From positions 124,001-188,000 of IMG/VR virus record IMGVR_UViG_3300042319_002138: a stretch of DNA of 64,000 nucleotides; one strand, given 5' to 3'. The notes beneath the pieces were generated by a model, which saw only the letters and a program-made list of their open reading frames with translations, did no database searches and was not told where the DNA came from. The translations under genes and the position numbers were made by a program. Below are positions 24,583 to 51,132 of this stretch, one piece after another. The first letter of the stretch is position 1, and each line of letters begins with the position of its first letter.

Positions 24583-24617
24583 AAATATCGGCCAATTTTG
24601 ACCGATATTTTTGTTTT
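24583..24617 (+). terminator. intrinsic terminator
   Basis: Stem AAATATCGG / CCGATATTT followed by a T-rich tract. Confidence 0.65.
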
Positions 24618-24644: not shown

Positions 24645-25121
24645 ATGACTGAAAATAAAAAACTAGCATTAGAATGTTTATGGGAAGAGGCTAAGATGTA
24701 TTCTAAATTATATTATGAAACAAAAGATGAATATAAAAAACATAAATACGTTTCACACTTTAGAAGTCCAATCTATGACGAAACAAACACAACATTCTTT
24801 CAAAAAGAATTTATTTCTTTAAGAGCCTTTAACAAAGAAGGTAGAGTTACAGAGGAACACTGTAATGGTAGAACTAACTGTTCTAAAAAATTATTAGAAA
24901 AAATACATTCAGAAGAAATCGTAACTTTTGATGAGTTCATTAATTTCCTAAAAGACTATTGTTATACAATAAAAATATTGTCAGAGGAAAATGTTTCTGT
25001 ATCAACGTACCTTAAAAAACATAAAGAAAAAAACTTTATAGAGGCTTATAGTGACTTGGGTATTATAATTTGTGACCAAGAAGGTACAGTAATCGAAGAA
25101 CTTAACTTACCTATTATTTAA
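24645..25121 (+). CDS. hypothetical protein
   Basis: 158 aa ORF immediately after the promoter. Confidence 0.6.
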   Translation: MTENKKLALECLWEEAKMYSKLYYETKDEYKKHKYVSHFRSPIYDETNTTFFQKEFISLRAFNKEGRVTEEHCNGRTNCSKKLLEKIHSEEIVTFDEFINFLKDYCYTIKILSEENVSVSTYLKKHKEKNFIEAYSDLGIIICDQEGTVIEELNLPII

Positions 25122-25122
25122 T

Positions 25123-26088
25123 ATGGTTGAAAACTCACTCATTTACGGTATAATTTTGGATGTCTTAGGGAAACCTAAAAAGACAAATGTTTCTAAACAA
25201 CAATATAGTTTTGATTGTCCTGTTTGTTCTGCCGAAAAAGGTGAATATGAAGGTGATGGTAAAGGTAATTTAGAGGTTAACTTATCTGAGGGTGTTTATA
25301 ATTGTTGGGCTTGTGGTGAGGTTAATGGAACCAAGGGTAGTCTTAAAAAATTATTCAGAAGTTTTGCTAACAAACAACAAGTTAAAAAACTAAAAATGAT
25401 TGGTTACACTTTAGATGATTTTAAATCTAAAGTAAAAGATGCCAACGTTATCGAAGACTTAACCTTACCAAAAGGATTTATTAGTTTTGAAGAAGGTAAC
25501 CCTAAATCACTGTTATATAAACAAGCTTGGAATTATCTTACTAAAGAAAGAAAAATTAAAAAAGAAATAATCCAAAGATATAAAATGGGTTATGTTAGTG
25601 GGGGACAGTACGACTCTAGGGTTGTAATTCCTTCTTATGATATTAATAATGAATTAAATTATTGGGTAACAAGAACTTATGTTAATGCAAAACCAAAGTA
25701 CTTAAATCCTGATTCGGATAAAGAAATTTTAATATTTAACGAATGTTGTGTAGATTGGGATTCAGATGTTTATTTGGTTGAAGGACCTTTTGACCATATT
25801 GTAGTTCATAACTCAATCCCACTATTGGGTAAAAAAATTTCTGATAAACTAATGCATTCTTTATTCCATAAAACAAACGGTAATGTAATAATTCTCTTAG
25901 ATGATGATGCATGGGAAGACGCTAAAAAACATTATGCAAAGTTGAATGTTGGAAAATTATTTGGTAGAATTAGAATTGTTAAAATGAAAGAAGGTTATGA
26001 TATAGCCAAAATTCATGAAGACTTTGGTAGAGAAGGTGTGATTGAATGTATGAAAAGTGGTATTATTCTTAAAGAAAGTGAATTGTGA
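25123..26088 (+). CDS. DNA primase (zinc finger + TOPRIM)
   Basis: CPVC...CWAC zinc-binding domain, KYLN, VEGPFD and LLDDDA TOPRIM motifs. Confidence 0.9.
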   Translation: MVENSLIYGIILDVLGKPKKTNVSKQQYSFDCPVCSAEKGEYEGDGKGNLEVNLSEGVYNCWACGEVNGTKGSLKKLFRSFANKQQVKKLKMIGYTLDDFKSKVKDANVIEDLTLPKGFISFEEGNPKSLLYKQAWNYLTKERKIKKEIIQRYKMGYVSGGQYDSRVVIPSYDINNELNYWVTRTYVNAKPKYLNPDSDKEILIFNECCVDWDSDVYLVEGPFDHIVVHNSIPLLGKKISDKLMHSLFHKTNGNVIILLDDDAWEDAKKHYAKLNVGKLFGRIRIVKMKEGYDIAKIHEDFGREGVIECMKSGIILKESEL

Positions 26089-26297
26089 TGGGATTTAATA
26101 AAAGAATTATTAAGAAAGAAATTTTATTAGAAAGATTTAGACTTGAGGGTTATCAAGGAATTATAAATTATATAGGTAATGCTGATGCATTACTTGGTTT
26201 AACTGATGAAATAAGGGAGATATTGGATATCACTTACTGTGATAATTGCCCAACTAAAAAGAATGTTGAGATTAATAAAGTAATAAATGGCAAATAA
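26088..26297 (+). CDS. hypothetical protein
   Basis: About 69 aa, overlaps both neighbours in coupled fashion. Confidence 0.5.
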   Translation: MGFNKRIIKKEILLERFRLEGYQGIINYIGNADALLGLTDEIREILDITYCDNCPTKKNVEINKVINGK

Positions 26298-27036
26298 ATG
26301 GGAAACACAAGTTTGGTTAGAACCGATAGAACATAAATATTATCATAAGGAAACTAACGAAGTTTTTAAATCAGTAACAACAATTTTATCATTATTGGAA
26401 CCTCATTTCGATAGTGACTCAGTGGCTTACGCAATATCCCAACAGTCGGATGATGTAAAAAAACCTGAGTATGTTGGTATGACCAAGGGTGAGATATTAG
26501 TAGAATGGGAACGTATTAATCGTGAGGCAAATGAATATGGTACTGAAGTCCATGAAATATTGGAGAGGTACCTATTGGCTGATAGGATATACATACCTAA
26601 AAACGATTATGAAAGAGAGGTAATAAGTAAATTCCAAGAAGTAGATGATATGTCTGGTACAGTTTACCCAGAAGCAGTTTTATTTAGTGAAAAATATAAA
26701 ATTTGTGGAACAGCGGATATTGTAGAGGATTGTGGTGATTATTTTAATATATTGGACTTTAAAACAAATAAAGAACTAAATTACATATCAAAATACAATC
26801 AATGGTTAAATAAACCAGTATCACATTTATCAGATTGTCAATACAACGTATACGCTCTACAACTATCTATATATGCATACATGATACAAATGCAAACAAG
26901 AAAAAAAGTTGGTAAACTACAGATATTTTATTTAAACCCACAAAAAGATTATACCTTTGAAAAAATTAATATGCCCTATTTGGGTAGGGATGCCAAAGCA
27001 ATTTTGGACTATTGGTTAGAAAAAAATAAAAAATAA
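26287..27036 (+). CDS. PD-(D/E)XK exonuclease (RecB/Cas4-like phage exonuclease)
   Basis: SVTTIL, GTEVHEILE, E.....ICGTADIV, ILDFKT and LQLSIYA motifs. Confidence 0.85.
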   Translation: MANKWETQVWLEPIEHKYYHKETNEVFKSVTTILSLLEPHFDSDSVAYAISQQSDDVKKPEYVGMTKGEILVEWERINREANEYGTEVHEILERYLLADRIYIPKNDYEREVISKFQEVDDMSGTVYPEAVLFSEKYKICGTADIVEDCGDYFNILDFKTNKELNYISKYNQWLNKPVSHLSDCQYNVYALQLSIYAYMIQMQTRKKVGKLQIFYLNPQKDYTFEKINMPYLGRDAKAILDYWLEKNKK

Positions 27037-27088
27037 AGTCTTTAGTGTTTAATATTTTTTGTCTATTATTTATTAAATAAACAGATAT

Positions 27089-28240
27089 ATGAGTGATAAA
27101 ATAGAATTCGAACCTAAATTAACTTTAGAGGAGACAATTGGAATAAAAGATAGATTTATAAATTTTTACCGAGACCTTGAGTCAATCCAAGACTATTTTT
27201 TGGCTAGAAAAAAAGAAAAAATTGTGGATATTAACCACGATAAATACACTAAAAACATGTTTGATGATTATAGTGTTGAGCCAAAAAACATGGAATTTGA
27301 AATCGAGGTGATTGAGGGTAATTTATTTAATCCTTCTACACAGATTATCACTTCACTACCTTTAGAATCACAAATCGGTAGACAAATCATGATGGGTATT
27401 AGAGAAAAAACCACTAACAAATATGTTGGGTTTATTCGTGTGGCTTCACCTGTTTTATCTATTAAACCTAGAAATGATTTCTTTGGTGAAACAATTAGAG
27501 CTACAGCTGTTAATAGACATATGATTAATGGGGCCATTATTGTTCCTGTACAACCTTTTGGGTATAACTACTTAGGTGGTAAACTATTAGCTTTAATTTC
27601 ATGTTCACACGAAATTAAAAATATGTTAAAAGAAAAGTATGGTGATAAAATCGATACTTGTTTTTTTGAAACAACCTCCCTTTATGGTGACATCAAAGGT
27701 ATGAGTCAATACGATGGTTTAAAACCATATATCCGTTACCAAGACATGACAGAATCAGATTTGTTTTTATTCCCAACAGAAGAAGTTTATGGGCCGATTA
27801 GAGCTAAAATGAGAGAGTTATACGGTAACCCTGAATGGGGTGGAAATACTGTAGACCCTGTACCATCAGGACCAAAGATGAGAGAGTTTAATAAGGCAAT
27901 ATCAGTCCTTAAAAATCACCTTAAACATTATGATATCGATGCTTATAATGAGTTTCATTCTTTCACCAAAACACATATGAAAGCCAAAACCAAAAAGAGA
28001 TATTATTATTCAAACTTTGGATACGACAATGTTATTGAACATGTTAATTCTGGTGGTGAAATTCCTTTAATTGAAGGACAAAATTTCCATAAACACAAAC
28101 TTTCTCATATGATTGAGTGGTGGAAAGGGAAAGCACAAAAAAGATACGAGAAACTTGTTGAGGAAAATAAACTAAGACACGAAATGGAAATCTACACTCT
28201 TGAAAGAATAGAGAATAACGATATAGACATGGTGAGATAA
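27089..28240 (+). CDS. DUF4338-like / GNAT-fold protein, possible DNA-modifying enzyme
   Basis: GFIRVASP..SIKPR, IVPVQPFGYNYLGGKLLAL and ETTSLYG...SQYDG motifs, as recalled for DUF4338-related phage proteins. Confidence 0.55.
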   Translation: MSDKIEFEPKLTLEETIGIKDRFINFYRDLESIQDYFLARKKEKIVDINHDKYTKNMFDDYSVEPKNMEFEIEVIEGNLFNPSTQIITSLPLESQIGRQIMMGIREKTTNKYVGFIRVASPVLSIKPRNDFFGETIRATAVNRHMINGAIIVPVQPFGYNYLGGKLLALISCSHEIKNMLKEKYGDKIDTCFFETTSLYGDIKGMSQYDGLKPYIRYQDMTESDLFLFPTEEVYGPIRAKMRELYGNPEWGGNTVDPVPSGPKMREFNKAISVLKNHLKHYDIDAYNEFHSFTKTHMKAKTKKRYYYSNFGYDNVIEHVNSGGEIPLIEGQNFHKHKLSHMIEWWKGKAQKRYEKLVEENKLRHEMEIYTLERIENNDIDMVR

Positions 28241-28657
28241 ATGTACGTCGAAGTAAGTGGTAGACAAACAGGTAAATCAACTAGGATGGTTGAGGACATA
28301 GTTCTTTTTTTAGAAGAAAATGGTGGAAAAACAGCTTTAGTGGTTTCACCAACAGGGGCTAGTAGAAAACTAATAAAAGAAAAGATATTTCAAAAATGTG
28401 GTTACTGTATAAACAGAGTAATTACATCACATAAGATGTTACCACCCATGAATACCATGAAACAATATGTAGATGAGTTTTTTTATGTAAAAGAAAAAGA
28501 TTTATTTATTGACGGAAGTGCTTATTATGCTGGTACACCTAAATTAGAAGGTTTCACTGGAAAATACCAAGATATAATAGACCTATTTAACCAAAAAATG
28601 GGTAAAATGGTACAATTAAAACCAATAAAAAAACATGGATTTGGAGGAAGTGATTGA
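28241..28657 (+). CDS. miniature terminase large-subunit ATPase-like protein with C-terminal tag
   Basis: GRQTGKST (terminase-type Walker A), LVVSPT, YVDEFF (Walker B) and GTP (motif III) in only 138 aa. No nuclease domain. Ends LKPIKKHGF. Confidence 0.7.
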   Translation: MYVEVSGRQTGKSTRMVEDIVLFLEENGGKTALVVSPTGASRKLIKEKIFQKCGYCINRVITSHKMLPPMNTMKQYVDEFFYVKEKDLFIDGSAYYAGTPKLEGFTGKYQDIIDLFNQKMGKMVQLKPIKKHGFGGSD

Positions 28658-29036
28658 AAAGTGGGGTAACTTAGGTTTTTTAGATGGGTTAACCGAAGAG
28701 TTTAAAGGTAATACAGCTATAACCTATGAAAAGGCTGCCACTATATTAATTAGTGATGGTCCTTTATTTGGTAGTGGTGATTTTTTAATAACTACTATAT
28801 TCCCTATAATATATAGAATTTGTAAAACAGGTTTAATTATTAAAAATGTCCCAAATTTAATACAAAAATTTGACCAGTTTATAACTGATAATAGAGAGGT
28901 TATTAGTGATTTACATGGAACAAATTTTGATGCTGAGGCTGAGTTATGTAGTTTTTTTGCTGAAGACTATTGTGAATGGATTAAAGACAATCCTGAAATG
29001 GACCCAATAAAATATATACCAAAACATAAATTATAA
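28635..29036 (+). CDS. major-capsid-protein (gp23) fragment-derived small protein with C-terminal tag
   Basis: EKWGNLGFLDGL...TTIFPIIYRI (gp23 N-terminus-like) and DLHGTNFDAEAELC (gp23 HGxDAxAEL-like). Ends PIKYIPKHKL. Confidence 0.7.
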   Translation: MDLEEVIEKWGNLGFLDGLTEEFKGNTAITYEKAATILISDGPLFGSGDFLITTIFPIIYRICKTGLIIKNVPNLIQKFDQFITDNREVISDLHGTNFDAEAELCSFFAEDYCEWIKDNPEMDPIKYIPKHKL

Positions 29037-29329
29037 TGAATTTATCATACACCACATTCAAAAATTGGTTTTTAGATAATTACGGACATTTAGGATTTGA
29101 TTTATCACCACTTTACCAAGACACACAAGATTTAAAATTTTATTTTGGTGTTTTATATAATAACAATAAAACACAGATGGTTAGGATAAGTTTGGAAAGA
29201 GTTTTAGATTTTACTGTTGGTGATAAGGAACTTAGAAAATTAATATTTGACACATTATTAACAACTTATGGTTATAGATTAGATGGTGATTTTATACCAA
29301 TAAAAAAAATTAAACAATTTGAATTGTAA
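29036..29329 (+). CDS. small tagged protein, paralog of 29329..29658
   Basis: WFLDNYGHLGFDLSP vs WFENEFGHLGFTVTP. Ends PIKKIKQFEL. Confidence 0.65.
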   Translation: MNLSYTTFKNWFLDNYGHLGFDLSPLYQDTQDLKFYFGVLYNNNKTQMVRISLERVLDFTVGDKELRKLIFDTLLTTYGYRLDGDFIPIKKIKQFEL

Positions 29330-29658
29330 TGGATGAAATTTCACAATGGTTTGAAAATGAGTTTGGTCATTTGGGGTTCACGGTTACACCTATAATGTAT
29401 AACCCAGATAACTTTTCTCCCGTTAGGGGAGTTTTATTTAGGCATCCACGAGTAAGTAGTAATTATACTTTTAAAACTAATATACAAATTTCAGTTCAAC
29501 TCACAGATGACGTATATCATTCTAATTTTAATGTTGAAACTGAATATAAAGAATTACTTACAGAGGCAGTAATTCAATTTTTAAATATACACGGATTATC
29601 AATAGAGGATTTAAAAGACTTTAAACCTATAAAAAAAATTAATAAATTTAAATTATGA
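29329..29658 (+). CDS. small tagged protein with gp23 C-terminal-like segment
   Basis: TPIMYNPDNFSPVRGVLFRH resembles gp23 DPxNFQPxxGxxTRY. Ends PIKKINKFKL. Confidence 0.65.
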   Translation: MDEISQWFENEFGHLGFTVTPIMYNPDNFSPVRGVLFRHPRVSSNYTFKTNIQISVQLTDDVYHSNFNVETEYKELLTEAVIQFLNIHGLSIEDLKDFKPIKKINKFKL

Positions 29659-30464
29659 TAAAAATAATCTATCACTGTGCTGATTTACACATCAGACTTT
29701 ATAAAAGACACGATGAATACCGTGAACAATTTCAAAAGTTCTTTGATTCAGTTAAAGAACATATGGAAGAAAACAACCTTAACAGAGAAGAGGTTAGGAT
29801 TGTTATTGCTGGTGATGTGGTACACTCTAAGAATCAGTTAACACCTGAACTAGTAGATTTAACAACATGGTTCTTTAAAAATTGTTGTGACATTTGTGAT
29901 ACCATAGTTATTTTGGGTAACCACGATTTCTTAGCCAATAACTTAGATAGAATGGATGCGTTAACACCCATTATTGATACAATGAATGATGATAGACTTA
30001 AGTTTTTAAAACACACAGGATGTTTTGAGGATGAGAATATTGTTTGGTGTTTATATGGTCATATCGAAGGTTCACAGAGACCTGAAATAGAAAAGGCCAA
30101 AGAGGACTTTGGTGATAAGACATACGTTGGTTTATATCATGACCCTTTAATTGGTTTAAAGACAAATGTTGGGTTTGAATTTGAGGACGGACAAGACATT
30201 TCTATTTTTGATGGTTGTGATTTTGTTTGTTGTGGTGATATTCACTTATACCAAGTGATGAATTATCATGGAACTACTATCGTACAACCCTCATCAATGA
30301 TACAACAAGATTTTGGTGAGTCTGTAGATAAACACGGGTTTGTTATATGGAATGTAGAAACTAAAAAACATAAACATATTAACTTAGAATCCGATTATGG
30401 GTTTTATACTTTTAAAATAAGCTCAATAGAGGATATTGAAAATGAAATAGAAAGGTTAGTATGA
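29655..30464 (+). CDS. SbcD/Mre11-like (T4 gp47-like) metallophosphoesterase nuclease
   Basis: ADLH, GDVVH, GNHD and GDIH motifs. Confidence 0.9.
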   Translation: MIKIIYHCADLHIRLYKRHDEYREQFQKFFDSVKEHMEENNLNREEVRIVIAGDVVHSKNQLTPELVDLTTWFFKNCCDICDTIVILGNHDFLANNLDRMDALTPIIDTMNDDRLKFLKHTGCFEDENIVWCLYGHIEGSQRPEIEKAKEDFGDKTYVGLYHDPLIGLKTNVGFEFEDGQDISIFDGCDFVCCGDIHLYQVMNYHGTTIVQPSSMIQQDFGESVDKHGFVIWNVETKKHKHINLESDYGFYTFKISSIEDIENEIERLV

Positions 30465-30775
30465 TAAAACCTAAAAAATATATAAAAAAATACCATTTTG
30501 GTGATTTTGATTATGAAAAGGAGTTAAATAGACTTTTAAATGAATTATCTGGACAGATTCAAAGTAGTAATAGAGGGGGACCTGCCAATTGGATTGTTTG
30601 TTCACCACAAGTAGCTGATTCAATAAACTCAATGATTATGGAATCCCAAATAGGTGATTGGAGGATAGAAGATAACAGTTTTATACAAGATATACAATTA
30701 AGACCTAGAAGAGTACCTCAGTATCTTAACTTGGATATTAGTATCACTAACACAGATAATAATTATTTTTTATAA
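30461..30775 (+). CDS. chimeric capsid-fragment/tail-sheath-fragment protein with N-terminal tag
   Basis: N-terminal PKKYIKKYHF. RGGPANWIVCSPQVA resembles gp23 RGxGNFIIAS. DIQLRPRRVPQYLNLDISIT resembles the gp18 sheath C-terminus. Confidence 0.65.
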   Translation: MIKPKKYIKKYHFGDFDYEKELNRLLNELSGQIQSSNRGGPANWIVCSPQVADSINSMIMESQIGDWRIEDNSFIQDIQLRPRRVPQYLNLDISITNTDNNYFL

Positions 30776-30780
30776 ATAAA

Positions 30781-31095
30781 ATGGCAAATTTTTCAGGATT
30801 AACAACACAAAGAGAAGAAATTATTAAAAAGTGGATGGACTCTGGGTTGTTAGATTGTTTAGACACTAATAATGAAACAAAAATAAATATAGCCTCATTA
30901 CTTGAGGGTCAGACATCACAGTTAATTAATGAAGTGGATGAAGTACCTAGCACTGGTGGTTTTGATACTATAGTGTTCCCAATAGTAAGAAGGATTTATC
31001 CTAGAACATTATTTCAAGACTTACAGTCACATTACGTGGAATTTAAAAAAGATGGTTTAACACCATATAATTACGTTAAAAAACATAAATTATGA
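30781..31095 (+). CDS. gp23 N-terminal fragment protein with C-terminal tag
   Basis: KKWMDSGLLDCL..NIASLLEGQ..LINE..FDTIVFPIVRRIYP. Ends PYNYVKKHKL. Confidence 0.75.
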   Translation: MANFSGLTTQREEIIKKWMDSGLLDCLDTNNETKINIASLLEGQTSQLINEVDEVPSTGGFDTIVFPIVRRIYPRTLFQDLQSHYVEFKKDGLTPYNYVKKHKL

Positions 31096-31313
31096 CAATA
31101 GGGGATAAAGTAAAATATGAGAATTCTTTTTCAGATACTATGATAGGTACTATAGTTAGTAAAGAACAACCTACTTGTAAATGTAAAGGAATGGGTAAAT
31201 GGGTTATTGACTTTAGTGGTGAAATTAAAAAAATAAAAATAAGTGATGAAAGATTAAGTCTATATAATATAGAACCAACTATGACTAATTTAAATTTTAA
31301 TTTTGGAAAATAA
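31092..31313 (+). CDS. small hypothetical protein (SH3/KOW-like start), possible degenerate tag
   Basis: Starts IGDKVKY. Ends PTMTNLNFNFGK, with the same P...F-x-F spacing as the tag. Confidence 0.5.
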   Translation: MTIGDKVKYENSFSDTMIGTIVSKEQPTCKCKGMGKWVIDFSGEIKKIKISDERLSLYNIEPTMTNLNFNFGK

Positions 31314-31704
31314 TAAAAAATATCCTGATAATATTGTCTTTAATGAAAAGACAGATAAATTTGATGCTAACCTAAAGCATTACCCAACAACGGTGGGTGC
31401 TCAAAAGTTTGAAATTTTACAGATAGATAAATCAGATGCAATAAAGGCTGATAAATATTTTAATAAAAAATTAGAAGAATTAAAGGAAGAGTATGATAAG
31501 TTGCTGAATGAGTATGAGTCAACCAAGTTATTATACAACACCAAATATTCATTTCAACCTATATTAGGTGAGATTTATTATATCTATAAGAATAATAATG
31601 ATGAAAACTTTTTAAGTATCATAAAACCTAATGAATGGAATAAACCATGTTATGGTAGTTATAAACTAAATACTAATGGAACATGGGAAGAGATAGAGTA
31701 TTAA
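31303..31704 (+). CDS. DUF2452-like protein
   Basis: YSFQPILGEIYYIYK..FLSIIKPNEW..GSYKL..GTW resembles DUF2452 of Bacteroidota and their phages. TTG start. Confidence 0.6.
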   Translation: MENNKKYPDNIVFNEKTDKFDANLKHYPTTVGAQKFEILQIDKSDAIKADKYFNKKLEELKEEYDKLLNEYESTKLLYNTKYSFQPILGEIYYIYKNNNDENFLSIIKPNEWNKPCYGSYKLNTNGTWEEIEY

Positions 31705-31711
31705 TAATAAT

Positions 31712-32302
31712 ATGAATAGAAATTTAACCCTACAAGAAAAAATAGTAAAATTAACCACAAATAGTTTTCATAACATAGATAATAACATAAGACAAGGTGA
31801 ACAAATTACTCGTGAAAACTATGAAACTTTAAGAGAACAAATAATTGGTCTTTTGGAATATCTTGAAAATGAAAAGGTATATGTTTTAGATTTACCAGGT
31901 AATATAATACCACACCCTGAAGCTAGAAGAAGGATGGTAGACCCTGAGTTAGCTAACACACCAACAACAAAAACTTTAGTAGTTGGTACTCAAAATTTTA
32001 ATACTTTTTATGATTTAGTTATAAAAATAATGGAAGATTTAAGTAGTAATAAAGAAGTTTTTATATACACAATAGACACCGTTAGGATATTCAACCCGAT
32101 AAATTTTGAACCTGATTATAGATACATAGTTAGATATAGTACTATCGATATGGATTATTGGTATAACCCACAATACGTAGAACAAATAAATAACCCTATA
32201 CAACCTGAACAATATTTTGAAAGGTATTCAAATACAAGAACAGATGAAAAATCTAATAAACCAAAATCTATTGGTGATAGTAAATTGATACACAAATTTT
32301 AA
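31712..32302 (+). CDS. hypothetical protein with gp23 C-terminal-like segment and degenerate tag
   Basis: IFNPINFEPDYRYIVRY resembles DPxNFxP...RY. Ends KLIHKF. Confidence 0.55.
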   Translation: MNRNLTLQEKIVKLTTNSFHNIDNNIRQGEQITRENYETLREQIIGLLEYLENEKVYVLDLPGNIIPHPEARRRMVDPELANTPTTKTLVVGTQNFNTFYDLVIKIMEDLSSNKEVFIYTIDTVRIFNPINFEPDYRYIVRYSTIDMDYWYNPQYVEQINNPIQPEQYFERYSNTRTDEKSNKPKSIGDSKLIHKF

Positions 32303-32892
32303 TGGAACTACCTAAAGATTTAAAAGATGAAATATGGGAATACTGTAGATTAAACGATATAACCGATTTGAATGCTTTTATGGTTAGGATGTTAAAACAA
32401 GGTTACAATATTGAAAAATATGGTGCCACCCCTTTTAAAATGGGGCAAAAAGAACCTGAAATTATTGAAAAAGAAATCATCAGGGAAGTGATTGTAGAAA
32501 AAGAGGTGATTAAAGAGGTTATTGTCGAAAAAGAGAAGATTGTTGAGGTAATTAAAGAAGTCCCTGTTGAGGTTATAAAAGAAATAATCGTAGAAAAAAT
32601 TGGTGGTATTACTGAAAATAGAGTGGAAGTACCTGTTGAAGTAATAAAAGAAGTTATTAAAGAGGTTATAGTAGAAAAAATTGTTGAGGTGCCAATTAAA
32701 AACGATAAACAATTTAAAGAATTAGAACAACAAGTTGAAAACCTTAAAATAGAGTTAGAGTTGGAAAAAAATAGAAACTATAAACCAACTAAAACAGAAA
32801 AACCAAAAGAAGAAAATTCAAAAACACCAACTAGCAACGTTATTAGTTGGATATCCAAATCTGAAAGGGATACTGATTTATATGGAGAGTAA
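32302..32892 (+). CDS. protein with EVIKEV/EVPVEV low-complexity repeats
   Basis: Central (E-V/I-I/P-K/V-E-K/V)n repeat followed by a coiled-coil. Confidence 0.7.
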   Translation: MELPKDLKDEIWEYCRLNDITDLNAFMVRMLKQGYNIEKYGATPFKMGQKEPEIIEKEIIREVIVEKEVIKEVIVEKEKIVEVIKEVPVEVIKEIIVEKIGGITENRVEVPVEVIKEVIKEVIVEKIVEVPIKNDKQFKELEQQVENLKIELELEKNRNYKPTKTEKPKEENSKTPTSNVISWISKSERDTDLYGE

Positions 32893-32946
32893 ACAAGTCT
32901 TTATTTAATCAAAAATTTAAAGTATATTTTTATAAATTAAAGAAAT

Positions 32947-35325
32947 ATGGAAAACTTGGTAAAAGAAGTTAAAACTGTTGTGCCTGAAAAGGCTAAAATC
33001 AGAGTTATATGGGATGATAGTCCAGAAAATTACACCCAGGAACGTGCAAAAAGAATTGCTAAATACTTTACTGAGAAATATAACAACCCTAATGTACAGG
33101 TTATTTTTAAACCTAAAAAAGTACTCACTGAAAATGGTGAAGTAGAAATGACCGTTGCTGATAATGTAATGGATACTAATTATCAAAGAAAGTTATTTAA
33201 ACAATGGATTACTGATAATAAAGTAGATGTTGATTGGGATAGACTCTTACGTTTAGATGATAAAGTAAACGAAAAATTATCACAAGAAAGAGAAACAGAT
33301 TATAGATATCGTAATTGGTATATAAAGGAGTTAGAGTGGTCTAATTTCCTTTCTTATGGTGATGGTAATAAAATCTCTTTTAAAGAGTTAGAGGGTATTA
33401 CAGTGATTACTTCAGACCCGTTAAATATGGGTGGTAAAACAACTCTTGCTTTAGATTTACTTTTATTCCTTTTCTTTAATACCACCACAAAAGGTAGTAC
33501 CGCAATTAAAATGTTTAATCTTTTTAGAGAAGATAAAAATGAAGTAGTTGTTAAGGGTAAAGTTGCTATTGATGGTGTAGATTATATCATCGAGAGAACT
33601 GTTGTACGTAAAGCTAAAAGGACTGGTGATGAGTATACCACTAGAACAGACTTATCTTTCTATAGAACCTTACCTGATGGTAGTATTGAAAACTTAGAAG
33701 GTGAACAAAGAAGAGAAACAGAAGAATTTATAAAAAAATCGGTTGGTTCAGTGAATGATTTTTTATTAACAATTATTGCTGATGCCGACAATCTTGAGGA
33801 CATCATTCACACCAAACCGACTGAAAAAGGGCGAATCCTATCTAGATTTATTGGATTAGAAGTTATTGAAGACAAAGAAACTATTGTCAAAGAAATGAAA
33901 TCTAATTGGTCAAAAGGATTAAAATCAGACCAATACAATATTACAGACTTAAATTCTGAGATTGGTGAACTAAAAAGTTTAATTTCTGAAAATGAAAACT
34001 CGATTAAAGAAAATGAATTAGAAATTAAATCCCTAGAACTTAATATTGAGTCTTCCACAGTCAAAAAAGAAAATTTAATTGGTAAAAAAATAGAGATAGA
34101 TTCTGATGTTATTAATTTAAGACCCGAAGATATTGATAATGAAATTGATAGAATCGAATTGTACGGTAAGAAGAAAAAGAGTGAGTATGAGGATACTAAA
34201 AAATCTTTTGATTCTATGACAGAACCAGTTTATGATGAAGATTTACATGAGGAATATGTAAAACAAGAACGAGGATTTAGTTTAGAAGTAGAGAGAGCTA
34301 AATCTAAAATAAAGGAAACTCAAAAAACAATTAAAAATTTAGAAGAGGGTGAGTTCTGTTCTTTATGTAAACAACCTTTAGCTGATGTAGACCATTCAGA
34401 TGAAATTGAGGAAAATAAAGTATTATTAGATACTTTGGGTAGTGATTTATTGTCTTTATCCGAAAAATTAGTTGAGATTACAAATCTAGTTAAAGAACAA
34501 GATAACATTAAATCTTCTGTTTGGGAATACGATAGAACTTCTTTAACGGTTTCTAAACTAGAATTGGATTTAGAAAAATTAAGATTAGAAAGAAAAGAAA
34601 AATTAGACCTTAAAAAACGTTATGAAGATAATCTAGACAATATCCAAAAAAATAAAGATTTGGAGAGTCAGATAATAGGTTATAATTCTAAAATAAGTGG
34701 ATTAGAATTGGAAAAAACTAATAAAATTAAATTAGGTGAAAGATTATCTAATGAAATTGAAACTTATAAAACAAAGATAAATAAGAACGAGGAATACATT
34801 AAAACTATTAAAGCAGAAGAAGAAATTAAAATAATTTTTGATGTTTATGCTAGAATGGTTGGTAAAAATGGTATCCTTAAAATAATAATGAGAAGTGTTA
34901 TGCCTTTAATTAACTCAGAATTGGATAGATTACTAGTAGATACGGCATCATTTAAATTAGAAGTGGATATTAACGATAAGAAAGAAGTTGAATTTTTAAT
35001 AGTAAAAGAAAACGAAAAAGGTGAGGCTATCAAATACCCTATTAATGAAGGTAGTGGATTTGAAAAAACAGTGTCATCATTAGCTTTACGTTGTGTAATG
35101 TCAAAAGTCAGTTGTCTACCAAAACCTAACATAATTGTTTTTGATGAGGTTTTTGGAAAGGTTGCTAACACTAATTTAGAGTTAGTTGGAAACTTCTTTC
35201 AGAAATGTTCAGAAATGTTCCCTAACATTTTTATTATAACACATAATGAAATTGTTAAAGATTGGGCGACTAAAATAATAACAATTAAAAAGAAAAATAA
35301 CATATCATCATTAATGGTACAATAA
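32947..35325 (+). CDS. SbcC/Rad50-like (T4 gp46-like) ABC ATPase with N-terminal extension
   Basis: NFLSYG, NMGGKTT (Walker A), CSLC zinc hook in the coiled coil, GSGFEK signature, IVFDEVFG (Walker B) and IITH. Confidence 0.92.
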   Translation: MENLVKEVKTVVPEKAKIRVIWDDSPENYTQERAKRIAKYFTEKYNNPNVQVIFKPKKVLTENGEVEMTVADNVMDTNYQRKLFKQWITDNKVDVDWDRLLRLDDKVNEKLSQERETDYRYRNWYIKELEWSNFLSYGDGNKISFKELEGITVITSDPLNMGGKTTLALDLLLFLFFNTTTKGSTAIKMFNLFREDKNEVVVKGKVAIDGVDYIIERTVVRKAKRTGDEYTTRTDLSFYRTLPDGSIENLEGEQRRETEEFIKKSVGSVNDFLLTIIADADNLEDIIHTKPTEKGRILSRFIGLEVIEDKETIVKEMKSNWSKGLKSDQYNITDLNSEIGELKSLISENENSIKENELEIKSLELNIESSTVKKENLIGKKIEIDSDVINLRPEDIDNEIDRIELYGKKKKSEYEDTKKSFDSMTEPVYDEDLHEEYVKQERGFSLEVERAKSKIKETQKTIKNLEEGEFCSLCKQPLADVDHSDEIEENKVLLDTLGSDLLSLSEKLVEITNLVKEQDNIKSSVWEYDRTSLTVSKLELDLEKLRLERKEKLDLKKRYEDNLDNIQKNKDLESQIIGYNSKISGLELEKTNKIKLGERLSNEIETYKTKINKNEEYIKTIKAEEEIKIIFDVYARMVGKNGILKIIMRSVMPLINSELDRLLVDTASFKLEVDINDKKEVEFLIVKENEKGEAIKYPINEGSGFEKTVSSLALRCVMSKVSCLPKPNIIVFDEVFGKVANTNLELVGNFFQKCSEMFPNIFIITHNEIVKDWATKIITIKKKNNISSLMVQ

Positions 35326-36496: not shown

Positions 36497-37312
36497 ATGG
36501 TATCATACAAACGTTACATTGACACAACAGAGGACTCTATTTCTAACTATTTAAAAGAGGTTAGAAAGATTGATTTGGTAACACCCGAAGAAGAGTTGGA
36601 GTTAGCTAAAAAAATTGCTGAGGGGGACAAAAGGGCATTAGATAAATTGGTTAAAGCTAATCTTAGATTTGTTATCTCAATAGCTAAAGAATATCAAGGA
36701 CAAGGGATTCCTTTGGTAGATTTGATTTCTGAAGGTAACTACGGATTGATAAAAGCTGCAGGTAAATTTGACCATACAAGAGGTTTTAGGTTTATTTCTT
36801 ATGCTGTTTGGTGGGTTAAGCAATCGATTCTACAATCTTTGTGTGAAAATTCAAGAACAGTAAGACTTCCTGTTAATATCACAAACCAGTTATCAAAAAT
36901 TAAAAAAGAGATTGCTGTCTTCGAACAAGAAAATCAAAGAATGCCAATCAACGGTGAGATGGATTTATCTGTACTAAATCACCCTACATGTACTTCATTG
37001 AATGATAAAATAAATGAAGAAGGTGATGAGATTATGGACTTAATTCCTGATTTAACATTTGCTAGACCTGACGAGGACACTATGTCTGATGAAATCTTAA
37101 AAAACGAATTGGAAAAAACTTTATCAATTTTAAGTGATAGAGAAAGAAAAATTGTTGACATGTATTTTGGTGTTGATGGTGGTGCTTTAACTCTTGAACA
37201 AATTGGTGATGAGTTTGGTCTTACAAAAGAACGTATTCGTCAGATTAAAGAAAAGGCTTTAAGAAAGTTGAAGAATAATAGTGAAAATCTTTTTGAATTT
37301 GTACAAAAGTAA
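36497..37312 (+). CDS. RNA polymerase sigma-70 factor (RpoD/SigA-like, no region 1.1)
   Basis: YLKEV, ANLRFVISIAKEY, DLISEGNYGLIKAA, FISYAVWW, RTVRLP and LTLEQIG..GLTKERIRQI. Confidence 0.95.
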   Translation: MVSYKRYIDTTEDSISNYLKEVRKIDLVTPEEELELAKKIAEGDKRALDKLVKANLRFVISIAKEYQGQGIPLVDLISEGNYGLIKAAGKFDHTRGFRFISYAVWWVKQSILQSLCENSRTVRLPVNITNQLSKIKKEIAVFEQENQRMPINGEMDLSVLNHPTCTSLNDKINEEGDEIMDLIPDLTFARPDEDTMSDEILKNELEKTLSILSDRERKIVDMYFGVDGGALTLEQIGDEFGLTKERIRQIKEKALRKLKNNSENLFEFVQK

Positions 37313-38037
37313 TGAAAATAGTTGTTTTTACAGGGGCAGGAGTTTCTAAGGAATCAGGTATTGATACATTCAGAGATGCTGGTGGTACATGGGAAAATGA
37401 AGATGTTGAAGCTGTTGCCACACCTGAAGGTTGGAGAAAAGACAGAGAAAGAGTATTGGATTTTTACAACAAAAGAAGGCAACAGTTACTTGGTGTCGAA
37501 CCCAATGAGGCACATAAACTTATTGCTGAATTAGAAAAAGAACATGAGGTAACCGTTATCACACAAAATGTAGATAATTTACATGAACGTGGGGGTTCTA
37601 CAAACATCTTACATTTACATGGTGAGTTAACTAAAGCACAGAGTAGTTTAAACCATAAGAAAGTTATTGATGTTGGTTATAAACCAACTAATATTGGTGA
37701 CAAACATGAAGACGGTTCACAATTAAGACCACACATTGTTTGGTTTAATGAGTACCCCAATAATATAAATGAATCTGTAATAGCTCTTAGAAATTGTGAT
37801 GTTTTATTAGTTATTGGCACCACATTATTTATAAGTTATACACTTGGTCTATTGAGGTCTTGTAAAGATTTACATAACCCTAATATGGGGGTGATAGACG
37901 TTGTTTGCATCGACCCCAACCCTCCTAAAGGTGAACTAGATGGTATGTTTAGAGATGTTAATTATATTGAAAAACCTGCCACTGAGGGTATGAAAGAATT
38001 TATTGAAAATTATTTGCCTAAATTTATTGCTAATTAA
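37312..38037 (+). CDS. cobB: NAD-dependent deacylase, sirtuin (CobB-like)
   Basis: FTGAGVSKESGIDTFRD, ITQNVDNLHE, LHGEL, RPHIVWF and IGT. Confidence 0.9.
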   Translation: MKIVVFTGAGVSKESGIDTFRDAGGTWENEDVEAVATPEGWRKDRERVLDFYNKRRQQLLGVEPNEAHKLIAELEKEHEVTVITQNVDNLHERGGSTNILHLHGELTKAQSSLNHKKVIDVGYKPTNIGDKHEDGSQLRPHIVWFNEYPNNINESVIALRNCDVLLVIGTTLFISYTLGLLRSCKDLHNPNMGVIDVVCIDPNPPKGELDGMFRDVNYIEKPATEGMKEFIENYLPKFIAN

Positions 38038-38195: not shown

Positions 38196-38618
38196 ATGAG
38201 TGTAAAGTATATTATCGACAACGCCGACAGTTTATTATCAGAACAAATAATAACGGGTGATTTATTAGTGACTAACATAATATCAGGAGCAACCTTTTAT
38301 GGTGATGGTTCTGGTTTAATTGGTGTTAGTGGTTCTTTTACTGGTGGTACTGTAACAGGACCTACTGAGTTTACAAGTGGTTTATCAGCTGACACAATTT
38401 ACGCCAATTATTTTATTGGGGACGGTTCTCAGTTAGCTGGGGTAGTTGGTCTTACTTATACCGATTTAGGGTTTACAGTAACATCACCGGCACCCTCAAC
38501 TATAAATCAAAATGTAGTTTTACCTTATAATTCAACAGTAACTTATCCAACACCTTTAACAGTTGACCCAGGTTTTTCTGTTACAGTACCATCTGGAACA
38601 ACATTATCAGTAATCTAA
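38196..38618 (+). CDS. tail-fibre-like/decoration protein
   Basis: FYGDGSGL and FIGDGSQL repeats typical of fibre shafts. Preceded by ATATTTAT at 38174. Confidence 0.55.
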   Translation: MSVKYIIDNADSLLSEQIITGDLLVTNIISGATFYGDGSGLIGVSGSFTGGTVTGPTEFTSGLSADTIYANYFIGDGSQLAGVVGLTYTDLGFTVTSPAPSTINQNVVLPYNSTVTYPTPLTVDPGFSVTVPSGTTLSVI

Positions 38619-39433: not shown

Positions 39434-39925
39434 ATGTCTACACAATACATTATTAATAATAACGACGGTCTATTATCTGGACAAACAATTAGTGGAGATT
39501 TAACGGTAACTAATTCTTTATCAGCCACAACATATTATGGTGATGGTTCTGGTTTAAGTAACATAGGAGTTAGCCAACCTTATAAAGTTTATACGGCTTT
39601 ATTAAATCAGGGTGGTGTTGGTATTGCTCCGACAGCTAGGGTATTAGAGAATACTTTAGGTGTTATAACTTGGGAGTATATCGATGCAGGTATATATTAT
39701 GGGACATTAACTAGTGCTTTTACACCTTCTAGTAGTGCTTTTACTTATGACAAAACAGTTGTGTTTGTACAAAGGTATCTATCTCTTTCTGCCGCAGGAG
39801 GTGGTAAAGATGTTGTTGCGTATAGGGGCAGTGATGAGAGTATTACTGTTGTAACAATGGACAATGTTGATTACATTAATAATGTTTTATATGAACAAGG
39901 AATAGAAATAAGGTTGTATGATTAA
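39434..39925 (+). CDS. fibre-like protein, paralog of the 38196 N-terminus
   Basis: MSTQYIINNNDGLLSGQTISGDL..YYGDGSGL vs MSVKYIIDNADSLLSEQIITGDL..FYGDGSGL. Confidence 0.6.
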   Translation: MSTQYIINNNDGLLSGQTISGDLTVTNSLSATTYYGDGSGLSNIGVSQPYKVYTALLNQGGVGIAPTARVLENTLGVITWEYIDAGIYYGTLTSAFTPSSSAFTYDKTVVFVQRYLSLSAAGGGKDVVAYRGSDESITVVTMDNVDYINNVLYEQGIEIRLYD

Positions 39926-39964: not shown

Positions 39965-40360
39965 TTATGGAACAAATATTTGTAATTGTCCAGCACTTAC
40001 AGTAAAATCAGGTTTTTTCATCACGGTGATTGTGACCAGATTCCAATGATTTGTTTCTAATTTTTCAGGATTAATAATAACATTTAAATTATCACCACCT
40101 TCTCTTGAAACTATAAATCTTCTATTAGGTCTTATTTCATTATCTATAATACTATAAATTATTTCATCTTTAGCATCCTCAAGTAGGTTAATAATGTCAT
40201 AATCATATATTTTTTCACCACTCCCGTGTCTCCATTTTCTTTGTGCTGTATGACCACCTGTATCATGATATAAGTCAAAAGTAAAAGTAATTTCACTACT
40301 TAACTCATGAAATTTTTCTTCCCTTAAGATAGTTTCTTTTATTAAAGATTTAATATTCAT
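39965..40360 (-). CDS. putative head-internal protein
   Basis: N-terminal IKSLIKETILREE motif. Late-type motif 5 nt upstream on the - strand. Confidence 0.6.
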   Translation of the reverse strand: MNIKSLIKETILREEKFHELSSEITFTFDLYHDTGGHTAQRKWRHGSGEKIYDYDIINLLEDAKDEIIYSIIDNEIRPNRRFIVSREGGDNLNVIINPEKLETNHWNLVTITVMKKPDFTVSAGQLQIFVP

Positions 40361-51120: not shown

Positions 51121-51132
51121 GTCCCTTTTTTT
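51104..51132. terminator. bidirectional intrinsic terminator
   Basis: AAAAAGGGACT-AATTA-AGTCCCTTTTT between convergent genes. Confidence 0.8.

What the first reader, a model, noticed from the sequence alone, without database searches (positions are those of the whole stretch)
28241..32302. Family of small 'virion-fragment + shared tag' proteins: candidate decoy/anti-defence or interference system
Seen in sequence: ORFs 28241, 28635, 29036, 29329, 30461 and 30781 (and weakly 31092 and 31712), plus 61533 and 61729 elsewhere, all carry one 10-residue terminal motif, P-x-K-x-[IVL]-x-K-[HFY]-x-[FL]. Copies: QLKPIKKHGF, PIKYIPKHKL, PIKKIKQFEL, PIKKINKFKL, PKKYIKKYHF (N-term), PYNYVKKHKL, PKKLLKIHSF (N-term), PIRKIPKFNF (N-term). 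By recalled motifs the bodies are short pieces of core morphogenesis proteins: gp23 major capsid (N-terminal, middle and C-terminal segments), terminase ATPase and the gp18 sheath C-terminus. The ORFs are intact, translationally coupled, and lie in the replication operon rather than the structural operon, which argues against pseudogene debris. Established knowledge: capsid and terminase are triggers of bacterial immune sensors (Avs3-type sensors bind the terminase ATPase domain, CapRel-SJ46 binds capsid protein, Lit is activated by the gp23 Gol peptide). Inference: these are modular early-expressed baits, with the tag as a common docking, degron or localisation signal. An alternative is dominant-negative poisons of co-infecting relatives' assembly.
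Basis: partly seen in the sequence, partly recalled or inferred. Interest (0 to 1): 0.95.

Follow-up and report, generated by a model that had tools for sequence, protein, structure and literature searches.

The report
Capsid-fragment proteins sharing one end-tag
An uncultured lake-water jumbo phage carries a conserved set of about ten small genes, each a cut-down piece of its own capsid protein (or a mini terminase-like ATPase) joined to the same ten-residue end-tag. The pattern is real and I found no description of it, but what the tag binds, and whether the proteins are immune decoys, is untested.

Summary
Seven small ORFs (28635, 29036, 29329, 30461, 30781, 61533, 61729) carry P-x-K-x-[IVL]-x-K-[HFY]-x-[FL] at an extreme terminus. 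In leave-one-out scoring, six of them have 0-1 equal hits among 69,756 proteome positions. ORFs 28241 and 31712 carry conserved variants.

The bodies are true pieces of the phage's own 599-aa gp23-type capsid protein (E 1e-6 to 1e-22). Four pieces (30781, 61729, 30461, 61533) tile the HK97 core minus the insertion domain, with a tag at every break.

ORF 28241 is not a fragment of the phage's terminase. It belongs to a wide family of stand-alone P-loop proteins with a terminase-ATPase-like fold and a disordered C-terminal tag. No sheath piece lies in the window. Relatives have a tagged sheath N-terminus and a tagged tail-tube paralog.

Tags are better conserved than bodies (79% against 61%). 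dN/dS is 0.2-0.9 (most 0.2-0.6), against 0.06-0.10 for well-conserved neighbours. The module always follows a DruA-like gene, and two complete related genomes lack the DruA-like gene, the P-loop gene and the capsid fragments together.

Best reading: accessory mimic proteins docked by a common short linear motif, probably anti-defence decoys (confidence about 0.3). An assembly role or interference with rival phages remains possible. Expression and binding partner are untested.

The parts
27089..28240 (+). DruA-like (DUF4338) gene, 383 aa, immediately upstream of the tagged genes. Candidate partner or effector of the module.
   Evidence: Pfam DruA 5e-15, above cutoff; PADLOC DruA 6e-9. It sits directly upstream of the P-loop gene, or with only one or two small (some tagged) ORFs between, in six lineages. 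It is absent together with the module from two complete relatives.
28241..28657 (+). 138-aa stand-alone P-loop NTPase (Walker A GRQTGKST, Walker B YVDEF). C-terminal tag QLKPIKKHGF (nt 28613-28642) followed by GGSD.
   Evidence: 188 representative homologs, nearly all 100-240 aa; 32 of 150 carry the tag core in their last 16 aa against about 1.2 expected. AF2 pLDDT 92 with a disordered tail at residues 121-138. Foldseek top hits are TerL ATPase domains, E >= 6.6e-3. No match to the phage's own TerL.
28635..29036 (+). 133-aa capsid (MCP) N-terminal fragment: MCP residues 26-86, plus a weak match to a piece of the spine helix (390-409). C-terminal tag PIKYIPKHKL (nt 29004-29033).
   Evidence: BLASTP 40% identity, E 2e-10; hhalign 95.5%, E 1.6e-8; the tag is identical in a 64%-identical ortholog.
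29036..29329 (+). 97-aa paralog of ORF 29329 (MCP N-terminal helix motif W..GHLGF plus a diverged MCP C-terminal segment). C-terminal tag PIKKIKQFEL (nt 29297-29326).
   Evidence: Paralogy with 29329, E 3e-7. No direct significant MCP match. Orthologs keep the tag.
29329..29658 (+). 109-aa protein: MCP N-terminal helix motif plus MCP residues 552-598. C-terminal tag PIKKINKFKL (nt 29626-29655).
   Evidence: BLASTP E 6e-7; hhalign 89%, E 2e-6.
29655..30464 (+). Mre11/SbcD-like nuclease (T4 gp47 type), 269 aa. Not tagged; it marks the operon context.
   Evidence: Pfam Metallophos 6e-9 and PHROG SbcD-like 5e-16.
30461..30775 (+). 104-aa protein: N-terminal tag PKKYIKKYHF (nt 30470-30499), then MCP residues about 445-530 (A-domain helix and strand). 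This is 'piece 3' of the tiling set.
   Evidence: hhalign 92.6%, E 4.6e-7; Pfam Gp23 positions 222-259, E 1e-3, below cutoff; orthologs start MEPKKYIKK.
30781..31095 (+). 104-aa protein: MCP residues 22-94 (propeptide plus N-arm). C-terminal tag PYNYVKKHKL (nt 31063-31092). 'Piece 1'.
   Evidence: BLASTP 45% identity, E 1e-14; hhalign 98.9%, E 3e-17. Only 18 homologs among 5.8 billion proteins, with the tag invariant.
31092..31313 (+). 73-aa small protein with a CKCKG motif. Its C-terminus, EPTMTNLNFNFGK, is a Lys-poor relative of the tag. Conserved member of the module.
   Evidence: Orthologs in four lineages end EPxxxxL[NG]FNF. In one lineage it sits between the DruA-like and P-loop genes. 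No MCP match.
31712..32302 (+). 196-aa protein with a weak MCP C-terminal-half likeness (NPxNFxP...RY segment). C-terminal short tag KLIHKF (nt 32270-32299).
   Evidence: hhalign 125-143 = MCP 555-573, E 0.055. The top structural neighbour in the ESM Atlas is a Gp23 cluster, TM 0.38, from a low-confidence model. Orthologs end ...[KR]H[KN]F, and AIKMIKKHKL in L119.
61533..61769 (+). 78-aa protein: N-terminal tag PKKLLKIHSF (nt 61539-61568), then MCP residues 529-587. 'Piece 4'.
   Evidence: Pfam Gp23 positions 304-366, 29 bits, above cutoff; BLASTP 46% identity, E 1e-14; hhalign 99%.
61744..62154 (+). 136-aa protein (probable TTG start at 61744; an in-frame ATG lies at 61729). N-terminal tag PIRKIPKFNF (nt 61750-61779), then MCP E-loop plus spine helix (357-419), then an inserted copy of MCP 79-108, then the start of the A-domain helix. 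It ends with the tag-like EISPHKFI. 'Piece 2'.
   Evidence: Pfam Gp23 positions 132-195, E 4e-22; BLASTP 59% identity, E 4e-20; colinear with residues 207-313 of a cyanophage gp23; orthologs.

Best explanation
WHAT IT IS. This is an accessory gene module of one clade of uncultured freshwater T4-like jumbo phages. A DruA-like gene is followed by a run of small, tightly coupled genes. One product is a 138-aa mini P-loop NTPase with a terminase-ATPase-like fold. The others are cut-down, diverged copies of the phage's own major capsid protein. In relatives there is also a tagged tail-tube paralog and a tagged sheath N-terminus. Each carries the same basic-aromatic peptide of about 10 residues, (D/E)-P-x-K-x-[IVL]-x-K-[HFY]-x-[FL], at its extreme N- or C-terminus.

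SHOWN. The motif and its strict terminal placement. Homology of the bodies to the capsid protein. Conservation of the tag above that of the bodies. Selection on the coding sequence. The disordered state of the tag in the one confident model. The operon context. The shared presence/absence with the DruA-like gene.

INFERRED. The tag is a short linear docking motif that brings all members to one common partner. The bodies work by mimicry, displaying surfaces of virion proteins. The main cluster is transcribed with primase, exonuclease, Mre11 and Rad50 and lacks the late-type promoter motif, so the proteins are probably made before the virion proteins. They would occupy host factors that recognise capsid, terminase or tail proteins, most plausibly immune sensors, without triggering them. 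The tag would supply common handling such as tethering, modification or removal. My first candidate for the partner is the DruA-like protein encoded immediately upstream.
For: - Motif specificity and terminal placement.
- Bodies are real MCP pieces.
- Other virion-type bodies carry the same tag: a tail-tube paralog, a sheath N-terminus in G005, and a TerL-ATPase-like fold for 28241.
- Tag identity among orthologs is 79%, against 61% for bodies (Fisher p = 2e-8), and tag codons vary synonymously.
- The same C-terminal core occurs in 32 of 150 distant P-loop family representatives, against about 1.2 expected. The tag is a disordered tail in a pLDDT-92 model.
- Evolution looks like an accessory, fast-changing family. 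dN/dS is 0.2-0.9 (most pairs 0.2-0.6), against 0.06-0.10 for DruA-like and for the well-conserved Mre11 pair. Members come and go between lineages.
- Two complete relatives with the same capsid family lack the fragments, the P-loop gene and the DruA-like gene together.
- The main cluster has no late-type promoter motif, and a terminator plus a sigma-70-like site precede the operon.
- From established knowledge: capsid, terminase, portal and tail-tube proteins are the known protein triggers of CapRel, Lit, Avs and DSR2-type defences.
Against: - No partner, sensor or activity has been identified.
- No RNA data were available: no RNA run was listed.
- The fragments are only 33-59% identical to the phage's own capsid protein, which is poor mimicry of a very conserved protein.
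- The 61533/61729 pair lies downstream of a late-type promoter motif, between proteins with a capsid-targeting-like N-terminus. That points to the head rather than to early decoys.
- Four pieces tile the capsid fold with tags at the breaks. This is also what a split, re-assembling capsid paralog would look like.
- The link to the DruA-like gene is only synteny and co-occurrence in a handful of genomes.
- PADLOC finds nothing defence-related in the small ORFs.
Confidence: 0.3

Rival explanations
1. Head-assembly or virion role. The tag is a procapsid-targeting or piece-joining peptide, comparable to the T4 internal-protein targeting sequence or to encapsulin cargo peptides. The capsid pieces would then be minor head, scaffold-like or size-determining proteins. 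In the extreme form, pieces 30781 + 61729 + 30461 + 61533 re-associate through their junction tags into an insertion-less capsid paralog, for example a vertex protein.
For: - The four pieces tile MCP 22-110 and 344-587 with small overlaps, and a tag lies on at least one side of each break.
- No gp24-type paralog was found in G001 or in two complete relatives.
- 61533/61729 sit behind a late-type promoter motif, among proteins with a T4-like M..IKKILKE N-terminus.
- The C-tagged members keep the N-terminal propeptide motif of the capsid protein.
Against: - Complete relatives with the same capsid family lack all of these genes, so they are not needed to build this capsid.
- dN is 2-5 times that of neighbouring genes, and members vary between lineages, unlike core head proteins.
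- The main cluster is in the replication operon without the late motif.
- There are redundant N- and C-terminal pieces, and tags also sit on a P-loop protein, a tube paralog and a sheath piece.
- No LxE protease site follows the tag.
Confidence: 0.2
2. Interference with competitors. The fragments are dominant-negative poisons that cap or mis-assemble the capsid, tube, sheath or packaging motor of co-infecting related phages or satellites. The tag would control their location or lifetime so that the producer is spared.
For: - The bodies are exactly the segments that make subunit contacts in HK97-fold shells: N-arm, E-loop/spine helix and P-domain strands. The same holds for the sheath N-terminus and the tube.
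- The family evolves fast and is patchily distributed.
- The phage and many relatives co-occur in the same lake samples.
Against: - The capsid protein is 74-100% identical across more than 100 related clusters, so a poison could hardly tell self from rival.
- There is no evidence of any self-protection.
- The most conserved, widespread member is a P-loop protein, not an assembly interface.
Confidence: 0.12
3. The tag targets a cellular or replisome site (membrane, DNA ends, Mre11-Rad50, clamp, or a protease such as ClpXP), and that targeting is the function. The capsid-derived bodies are merely re-used small folds with a new role unrelated to mimicry.
For: - The tag works at either terminus, is basic-amphipathic and disordered. 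In this it resembles the membrane-targeting tails of MinD, FtsA and MreB, clamp-binding peptides, and the MuA-type ClpX signal (from my own knowledge).
- A P-loop ATPase with such a tail recalls MinD.
- The genes flank Mre11 and precede Rad50 in every lineage.
Against: - The invariant Pro, the frequent His and the fixed spacing suggest a specific protein pocket rather than generic membrane or DNA binding.
- It gives no reason why the bodies should be drawn repeatedly from virion proteins.
- No known clamp, SSB or ClpX motif matches.
Confidence: 0.12
4. No function. The ORFs are decaying debris of a duplicated capsid gene, and the 'tag' is a by-product of A-rich translation-initiation regions where genes overlap.
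For: - The genome is 31% G+C.
- The tags are rich in AAA and ATA codons and overlap the start regions of downstream genes.
Against: - All ORFs are intact in lineages down to 36-50% amino-acid identity, and dN/dS is below 1 in every pair.
- Only these termini, out of 280 equally A-rich and mostly close-packed genes, score on the motif.
- Pro, aromatic/His and hydrophobic positions are fixed while codons vary.
- The same motif ends distant P-loop proteins in other genomic settings.
Confidence: 0.03

Closest known systems
T4 gp23/gp24 capsid paralogy (Pfam Gp23, PF07068)
   Same: The bodies descend from the gp23-type major capsid protein by duplication. Two ORFs pass the Pfam Gp23 threshold.
   Different: They are 78-196-aa pieces, not a whole HK97 fold. 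They are scattered and out of order in the genome, lack the insertion domain, carry a terminal tag, and are absent from complete relatives.
T4 internal proteins (IPI-III, Alt) with the N-terminal capsid-targeting sequence
   Same: Unrelated bodies share a terminal peptide of about 10 residues. The genes lie outside the head module. This phage also has a separate T4-like N-terminal motif (M..IKKILKE) on at least 16 proteins.
   Different: The tag sequence is different, it occurs at the C-terminus as well, and it is not followed by an LxE protease site. The cargo here would be pieces of the capsid protein itself.
Encapsulin cargo-loading peptides
   Same: A short disordered peptide at either terminus docks diverse cargo on an HK97-fold protein.
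   Different: There is no sequence likeness. No shell other than the phage capsid is present, and the bodies are themselves HK97 fragments.
Phage anti-defence proteins that compete with or mimic a trigger (e.g. DSAD1 versus the tail tube at DSR2; Ocr as DNA mimic)
   Same: The proposed logic is the same: occupy a sensor that recognises a phage component. The bodies match the classes of protein known as triggers (capsid, terminase ATPase, tail tube).
   Different: No homology to any described anti-defence protein. The mimic is a paralogous fragment of the trigger itself plus a shared tag. Nothing has been shown experimentally.
MinD-type P-loop ATPases with a C-terminal membrane-targeting tail
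   Same: A small P-loop protein ends in a short basic-amphipathic tail (...IKKHGFGG, compared with ...KRLFGG).
   Different: The fold is nearest to terminase ATPase domains, not to the deviant Walker A ParA/MinD family. The tail is rich in His and Pro.
Capsid-derived dominant-negative factors of eukaryotes (Fv1, enJS56A1)
   Same: A truncated or diverged capsid gene is kept under selection to interfere with capsid function.
   Different: Those are host genes acting against viruses. Here the virus itself encodes them, as many pieces with a common tag.

Membership tests
Gp23 major capsid protein family (PF07068) | Match to the family profile above the curated cutoff (24.4 bits) | tested here: met
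   61729 scores 79.4 bits and 61533 scores 29.0 bits. 30461 scores 18.8 bits, below the cutoff. 28635, 30781 and 29329 match the phage's own capsid protein instead, at E 2e-10, 1e-14 and 6e-7.
Gp23 major capsid protein family (PF07068) | A complete HK97 fold (N-arm, E-loop, P-domain, A-domain) in one chain, able to form capsomers | tested here: not met
   Each ORF covers only 35-100 residues of the 599-aa protein, so they are fragments, not capsid proteins.
Terminase large subunit (Terminase_6N, PF03237) | Profile match to the TerL ATPase, and presence of the C-terminal nuclease domain | tested here: not met
   No Pfam hit for 28241. 2 of 34 family members hit Terminase_6N, at best E 0.006. 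hhalign against the phage's own TerL gives 1.6% probability. The protein is 138 aa and has no nuclease domain.
Terminase large subunit (Terminase_6N, PF03237) | ATPase-domain fold | tested here: inconclusive
   Foldseek top hits are TerL ATPase domains (4znk, 8dgc_E, 2o0h; TM by query 0.54-0.60). The best E is 6.6e-3, and generic ASCE helicases and Rho follow closely.
Contractile tail sheath (PF04984) | Similarity of any window ORF to the phage's sheath | tested here: not met
   No hit at E <= 5. Only a relative's ORF (G005 50828-51166) matches sheath residues 4-50, which is the N-terminus and not the C-terminus.
T4-type capsid-targeting sequence | N-terminal peptide ending in an L/I-x-E prohead-protease site | tested here: not met
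   The tags lack the site, and five ORFs carry the tag at the C-terminus. A different motif in this genome does fit the feature.
Known anti-phage-defence or anti-defence protein families | Profile match in PADLOC, Pfam or PHROGs | tested here: not met
   Only the upstream gene matches DruA. The small ORFs have no significant hits.
Immune decoy (functional class) | Binds a host sensor of a virion protein and prevents its activation | not testable with these tools
   The host is unknown and uncultured, no multimer prediction tool was available, and no experiments exist.

The most novel reading that the evidence does not exclude
A bait-and-tag counter-defence system. The phage keeps a fast-evolving library of mimics of its own virion proteins: tiled capsid pieces, a mini terminase-like ATPase, a tube paralog and a sheath N-terminus. 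The shared terminal peptide recruits one co-encoded effector, the DruA-like (possibly GNAT-like) protein, to whatever host sensor each bait binds, and so neutralises many structurally unrelated sensors with one enzyme.
Probability: 0.1. Interest if true: 0.92.

Novelty: categorically new. Interest (0 to 1): 0.78.

Why it matters
Capsid, terminase and tail proteins are the main protein signals by which bacterial immune systems detect phages. How phages hide such indispensable, slowly evolving proteins is an open question. This module is a conserved, selected family in which a phage has repeatedly cut up its own capsid gene and attached one common docking peptide. That makes the question directly testable: find the partner of a 10-residue peptide, then ask what each bait binds.

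If the function instead lies in assembly, it would be the first capsid-fold protein found to work as tagged pieces. In either case, the tag gives a simple search key for further members in uncultured jumbo phages. My novelty call rests on four full-text literature searches and on domain, family and structure libraries that returned nothing comparable. It describes the architecture, not a proven function.

Tried and rejected
- DNA-level repeat or recombination site: rejected. Tag codons differ between paralogs and vary synonymously between orthologs.
- Alternative genetic code, read-through, or adjacent-ORF fusion: rejected. Stop codons are mixed TAA/TGA, and the genomic order of the pieces (3,1 and 4,2) is not the capsid order.
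- A-rich translation-start composition as the source of the tag: rejected by proteome-wide and leave-one-out scoring.
- 28241 as a fragment of the phage's own TerL or of an SF1 helicase: no support. The deep search shows a stand-alone family.
- The first AF2 run on 28241, with three sequences, was useless (pLDDT 47). The 34-sequence run worked.
- Origin of the tag from a capsid segment (NFxPVKGI...RY, or PIGKLFYF) or from the tube N-terminus (EPKKKNRF): suggestive look-alikes only, none significant.
- Nearest cultured phage, for proteomics or annotation: none. Capsid identity is at most 44%, and 28241 has no hit in 50,697 phage records.
- Profile searches against PDB sequences for 28241, 31712 and the DruA-like protein: nothing.
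- RNA evidence: no RNA run was listed.
- The genome search with PF03237 missed the phage's TerL, although its homologs carry that family. Negative family searches in these contigs should therefore be read with care. I ran a positive control for the key negative result.
- Literature searches for capsid-fragment decoys found nothing comparable.

Full report
SETTING. The window is bases 10461-74460 of a 95.6-kb IMG/VR viral contig with 31% G+C. CheckV puts it at 29% complete, so the genome should be about 320 kb. Near-identical contigs of up to 226 kb exist (G001), and I assembled G001 for whole-genome comparisons. The sequence occurs in at least 24 lake-water metagenome runs. The closest cultured phages have capsid proteins at most 44% identical. 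A distant relative encodes a protein with a type-IX-secretion tail (Por_Secre_tail), which hints at a Bacteroidota host.

IS THE MOTIF REAL? Yes. A position matrix scanned over all 69,763 positions of 280 G001 proteins gives 21.7-30.4 bits for the seven sites. It gives 18.2 bits for one untrained site, the N-terminus of a tail-tube paralog outside the window. Everything else scores at most 12.6 bits. In leave-one-out scoring, six of the seven have 0-1 background positions at or above their score; 61533 is weaker, with 11.

The variants in ORFs 28241 and 31712 look weak in the window but are borne out by orthologs: PIKPLKRHEF-GGNN for 28241 and AIKMIKKHKL for 31712. ORF 31092 has only a Lys-poor cousin of the motif. 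N-terminal tags start M-E-P. For 61729 the conserved start is the TTG at 61744.

The motif is a protein-level feature. Codons differ among paralogs and vary synonymously among orthologs while the residue pattern stays. Tag positions are 79% identical among orthologs, against 61% for the bodies (p = 2e-8).

ARE THE BODIES VIRION FRAGMENTS? G001 holds the real 599-aa gp23-type capsid protein, plus sheath, tube, portal, protease and TerL genes. Matches to this capsid protein (MCP) by BLASTP and profile-profile comparison are as follows:
- 30781 = MCP residues 22-94 (45% identity, E 1e-14; hhalign 98.9%).
- 28635 = residues 26-86 (E 2e-10), plus a weak spine-helix piece.
- 29329 = residues 552-598 (E 6e-7).
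- 30461 = residues 445-479 (hhalign 92.6%, E 5e-7).
- 61533 = residues 529-587 (E 1e-14).
- 61729 = residues 357-419 (59% identity, E 4e-20), plus an inserted copy of residues 79-108.

Pfam Gp23 independently hits 61729 (E 4e-22) and 61533 (29 bits, above cutoff). ORF 29036 is a paralog of 29329 (E 3e-7). ORF 31712 has only weak capsid likeness.

However, relative G005 has an extra tagged ORF whose body matches the sheath N-terminus (33% over 48 aa). G001 also has a full-length tail-tube paralog with an N-terminal tag (26% identical to the tube, E 1e-11).

ORF 28241. It has no profile similarity to the phage's own TerL or to a neighbouring SF1 helicase in a relative. A full HMM search of 1.84 billion representative proteins found 188 relatives. 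Nearly all are stand-alone proteins of 100-240 aa matched from residue 1. Of the best 150, 32 end in the tag core ([IV]-K-[KR]-H-x-[FL]), against about 1.2 expected. The tag is therefore an old feature of this family.

With a 34-sequence alignment, AlphaFold2 gives pLDDT 92. The last 18 residues, including the tag, are unstructured at pLDDT about 64. Foldseek's best PDB matches are terminase ATPase domains: P74-26, the PhiV-1 TerL chain of the Avs3 complex, and T4 gp17 (TM 0.54-0.60). None reaches E 1e-3, and generic ASCE ATPases follow. So 28241 has a 'terminase-ATPase-like' fold but is not a terminase fragment.

A NEW POINT: TILING. ORF 61729 is colinear with residues 207-313 of an insertion-less cyanophage gp23. 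By extending the local matches colinearly, I place 30461 at about 300-390 and 61533 at about 387-441; the directly aligned segments are 319-341 and 392-441. ORF 30781 covers the N-terminal part up to about residue 101-124. In the phage's own numbering, the four pieces cover residues 22-110 and 344-587. That is the whole HK97 core minus the 110-343 insertion domain.

A tag lies on at least one side of every break. Piece 1 has a C-tag. Piece 2 has an N-tag plus a tag-like C-end. Pieces 3 and 4 have N-tags. The genomic order is 3,1 (at 30461/30781) and 4,2 (at 61533/61729). The other members (28635, 29036, 29329, 31712) are redundant, internally deleted versions. All four ORFs with a full C-terminal tag (28635, 29036, 29329, 30781) keep the capsid protein's N-terminal W..LGF motif.

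CONTEXT AND EVOLUTION. Cluster 28241-32302 lies in a unit that starts after a strong hairpin terminator (24583-24610) and a sigma-70-like site. The unit runs through primase, a PD-(D/E)XK exonuclease, the DruA-like gene, Mre11 and Rad50. A motif ATATTTAT[AT] sits about 22 nt upstream of some 35 genes, including portal, sheath and tube, and is probably the late promoter. It is absent from 24645-35325, but one copy (58882) precedes the unit that holds 61533/61729. That pair is also flanked by proteins with an N-terminal M..[IL][KR]K[IV][IL]KE motif, found on at least 16 proteins and reminiscent of the T4 capsid-targeting/propeptide signal.

The order DruA-like, P-loop(tag), MCP-N piece(tag), MCP-C piece(tag), Mre11 is kept in lineages as distant as 33-44% identity in the P-loop protein, in some with one or two extra small ORFs after the DruA-like gene. 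A distant contig also keeps the 61533/61729 pair with its tags. dN/dS is 0.2-0.9 for the small ORFs (most pairs 0.2-0.6), against 0.06-0.10 for DruA-like and for the well-conserved Mre11 pair. Members are gained and lost between lineages.

Two complete genomes of relatives (345 and 296 kb, capsid 60-62% identical) contain one capsid gene only. They have no fragments, no gp24-type paralog, no P-loop(tag) gene and no DruA-like gene. A positive control for the P-loop search worked. The module is thus accessory, and its parts share one presence/absence pattern.

INTERPRETATION. Debris and composition artefacts are excluded. The tag behaves like a short linear docking motif: it is terminal, disordered, more conserved than its carriers, and attached to unrelated bodies. 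The bodies are drawn again and again from virion proteins.

I rank an anti-defence mimic/decoy role first, at about 0.3. The reasons are that the module is dispensable for building the capsid, evolves fast, sits mainly in a non-late operon, is linked to a homolog of a defence-system protein, and uses exactly the classes of protein known to trigger bacterial sensors. The cases against it are serious. There is no partner, no expression data, and only 33-59% identity to the capsid protein. The tiling and the setting of 61533/61729 would suit a head-associated role, which I put at about 0.2. Interference with rival phages (0.12) and a targeting function unrelated to mimicry (0.12) remain open. The remainder of the probability is unassigned.

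NOVELTY. The domain, family and structure libraries and four full-text literature searches gave no precedent for tagged capsid-fragment families. I therefore rate the architecture as new, while stressing that its function is unproven.

Noticed in passing
window 39965-40360(-), 44264-44533, 47523-47906, 60624-61529, 62479-63855, 63855 onward; at least 16 proteins in G001: A second terminal motif family. N-termini read M-x-x-[IL]-[KR]-K-[IV]-[IL]-[KR]-E-[ES], and 18 of the 26 regex hits in the proteome lie in the first 30 residues. Carriers include small proteins next to the prohead protease and scaffold genes. It looks like a T4-type capsid-targeting/propeptide signal ending in an LxE-type protease site.
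   Followed up: partly
window 19003, 35349, 38174, 46164, 47956, 51490, 54588, 58882 and others; G001 genome-wide: The motif ATATTTAT[AT] (often ATATTTATAATAAAA) occurs 55 times on the + strand, about 35 of them 13-46 nt upstream of gene starts, including portal, sheath and tube. It is a likely late promoter, differing from the T4 TATAAATA.
   Followed up: partly
window 27089-28240: A phage-encoded homolog of DruA, a Druantia type I component (DUF4338). An ESM-Atlas feature search gives a weak lead to 'GNAT-phage-like' (score 0.85 only). Pfam gives nothing beyond DruA.
   Followed up: partly
window 30461-31095: Synonymous divergence between lineages is much lower here (dS 0.14-0.42) than in flanking genes (about 1.2-1.3), while dN is high. 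The pair is also absent from one distant lineage (L119). This suggests recent exchange of the two-gene cassette, or constraint on the RNA.
   Followed up: no
window 36497-38037, 53652-54584, 56877-58319, 59818-60612: Unusual cargo for a phage: a sigma-70-family factor next to a Sir2 protein, a full DnaJ, a TROVE/vWA-like protein (DUF2828 + DUF7788) and a Mom-family protein.
   Followed up: no
window 38196-38618 and 39434-39925; 47977-48435: Other partial paralogies without the tag. Two proteins share their first 47 residues at 66% identity. A 152-aa ORF matches residues 158-303 of a 345-aa protein encoded elsewhere (G001 70439-71476).
   Followed up: no
window 24583-24610: A perfect 12-bp hairpin with T-runs on both sides, probably a bidirectional terminator. 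It marks the start of the operon that holds the finding.
   Followed up: no
relatives' TerL genes (e.g. P0153, P0164, P0187; 1025-1056 aa): Many close homologs of this phage's terminase large subunit carry an intein with a LAGLIDADG endonuclease. The G001 copy (617 aa) does not.
   Followed up: no
window 32302-32892: A 196-aa protein whose middle is a run of (E/K)-V-I-K-E-V-type repeats. It is conserved next to the module in all relatives.
   Followed up: no
G001 107014-113559 (upstream of the window): Three tandem paralogs (642, 661 and 845 aa) share a 67-73% identical N-terminal 435 residues and have different C-termini. This looks like a set of exchangeable tail-fibre or receptor-binding proteins.
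   Followed up: no
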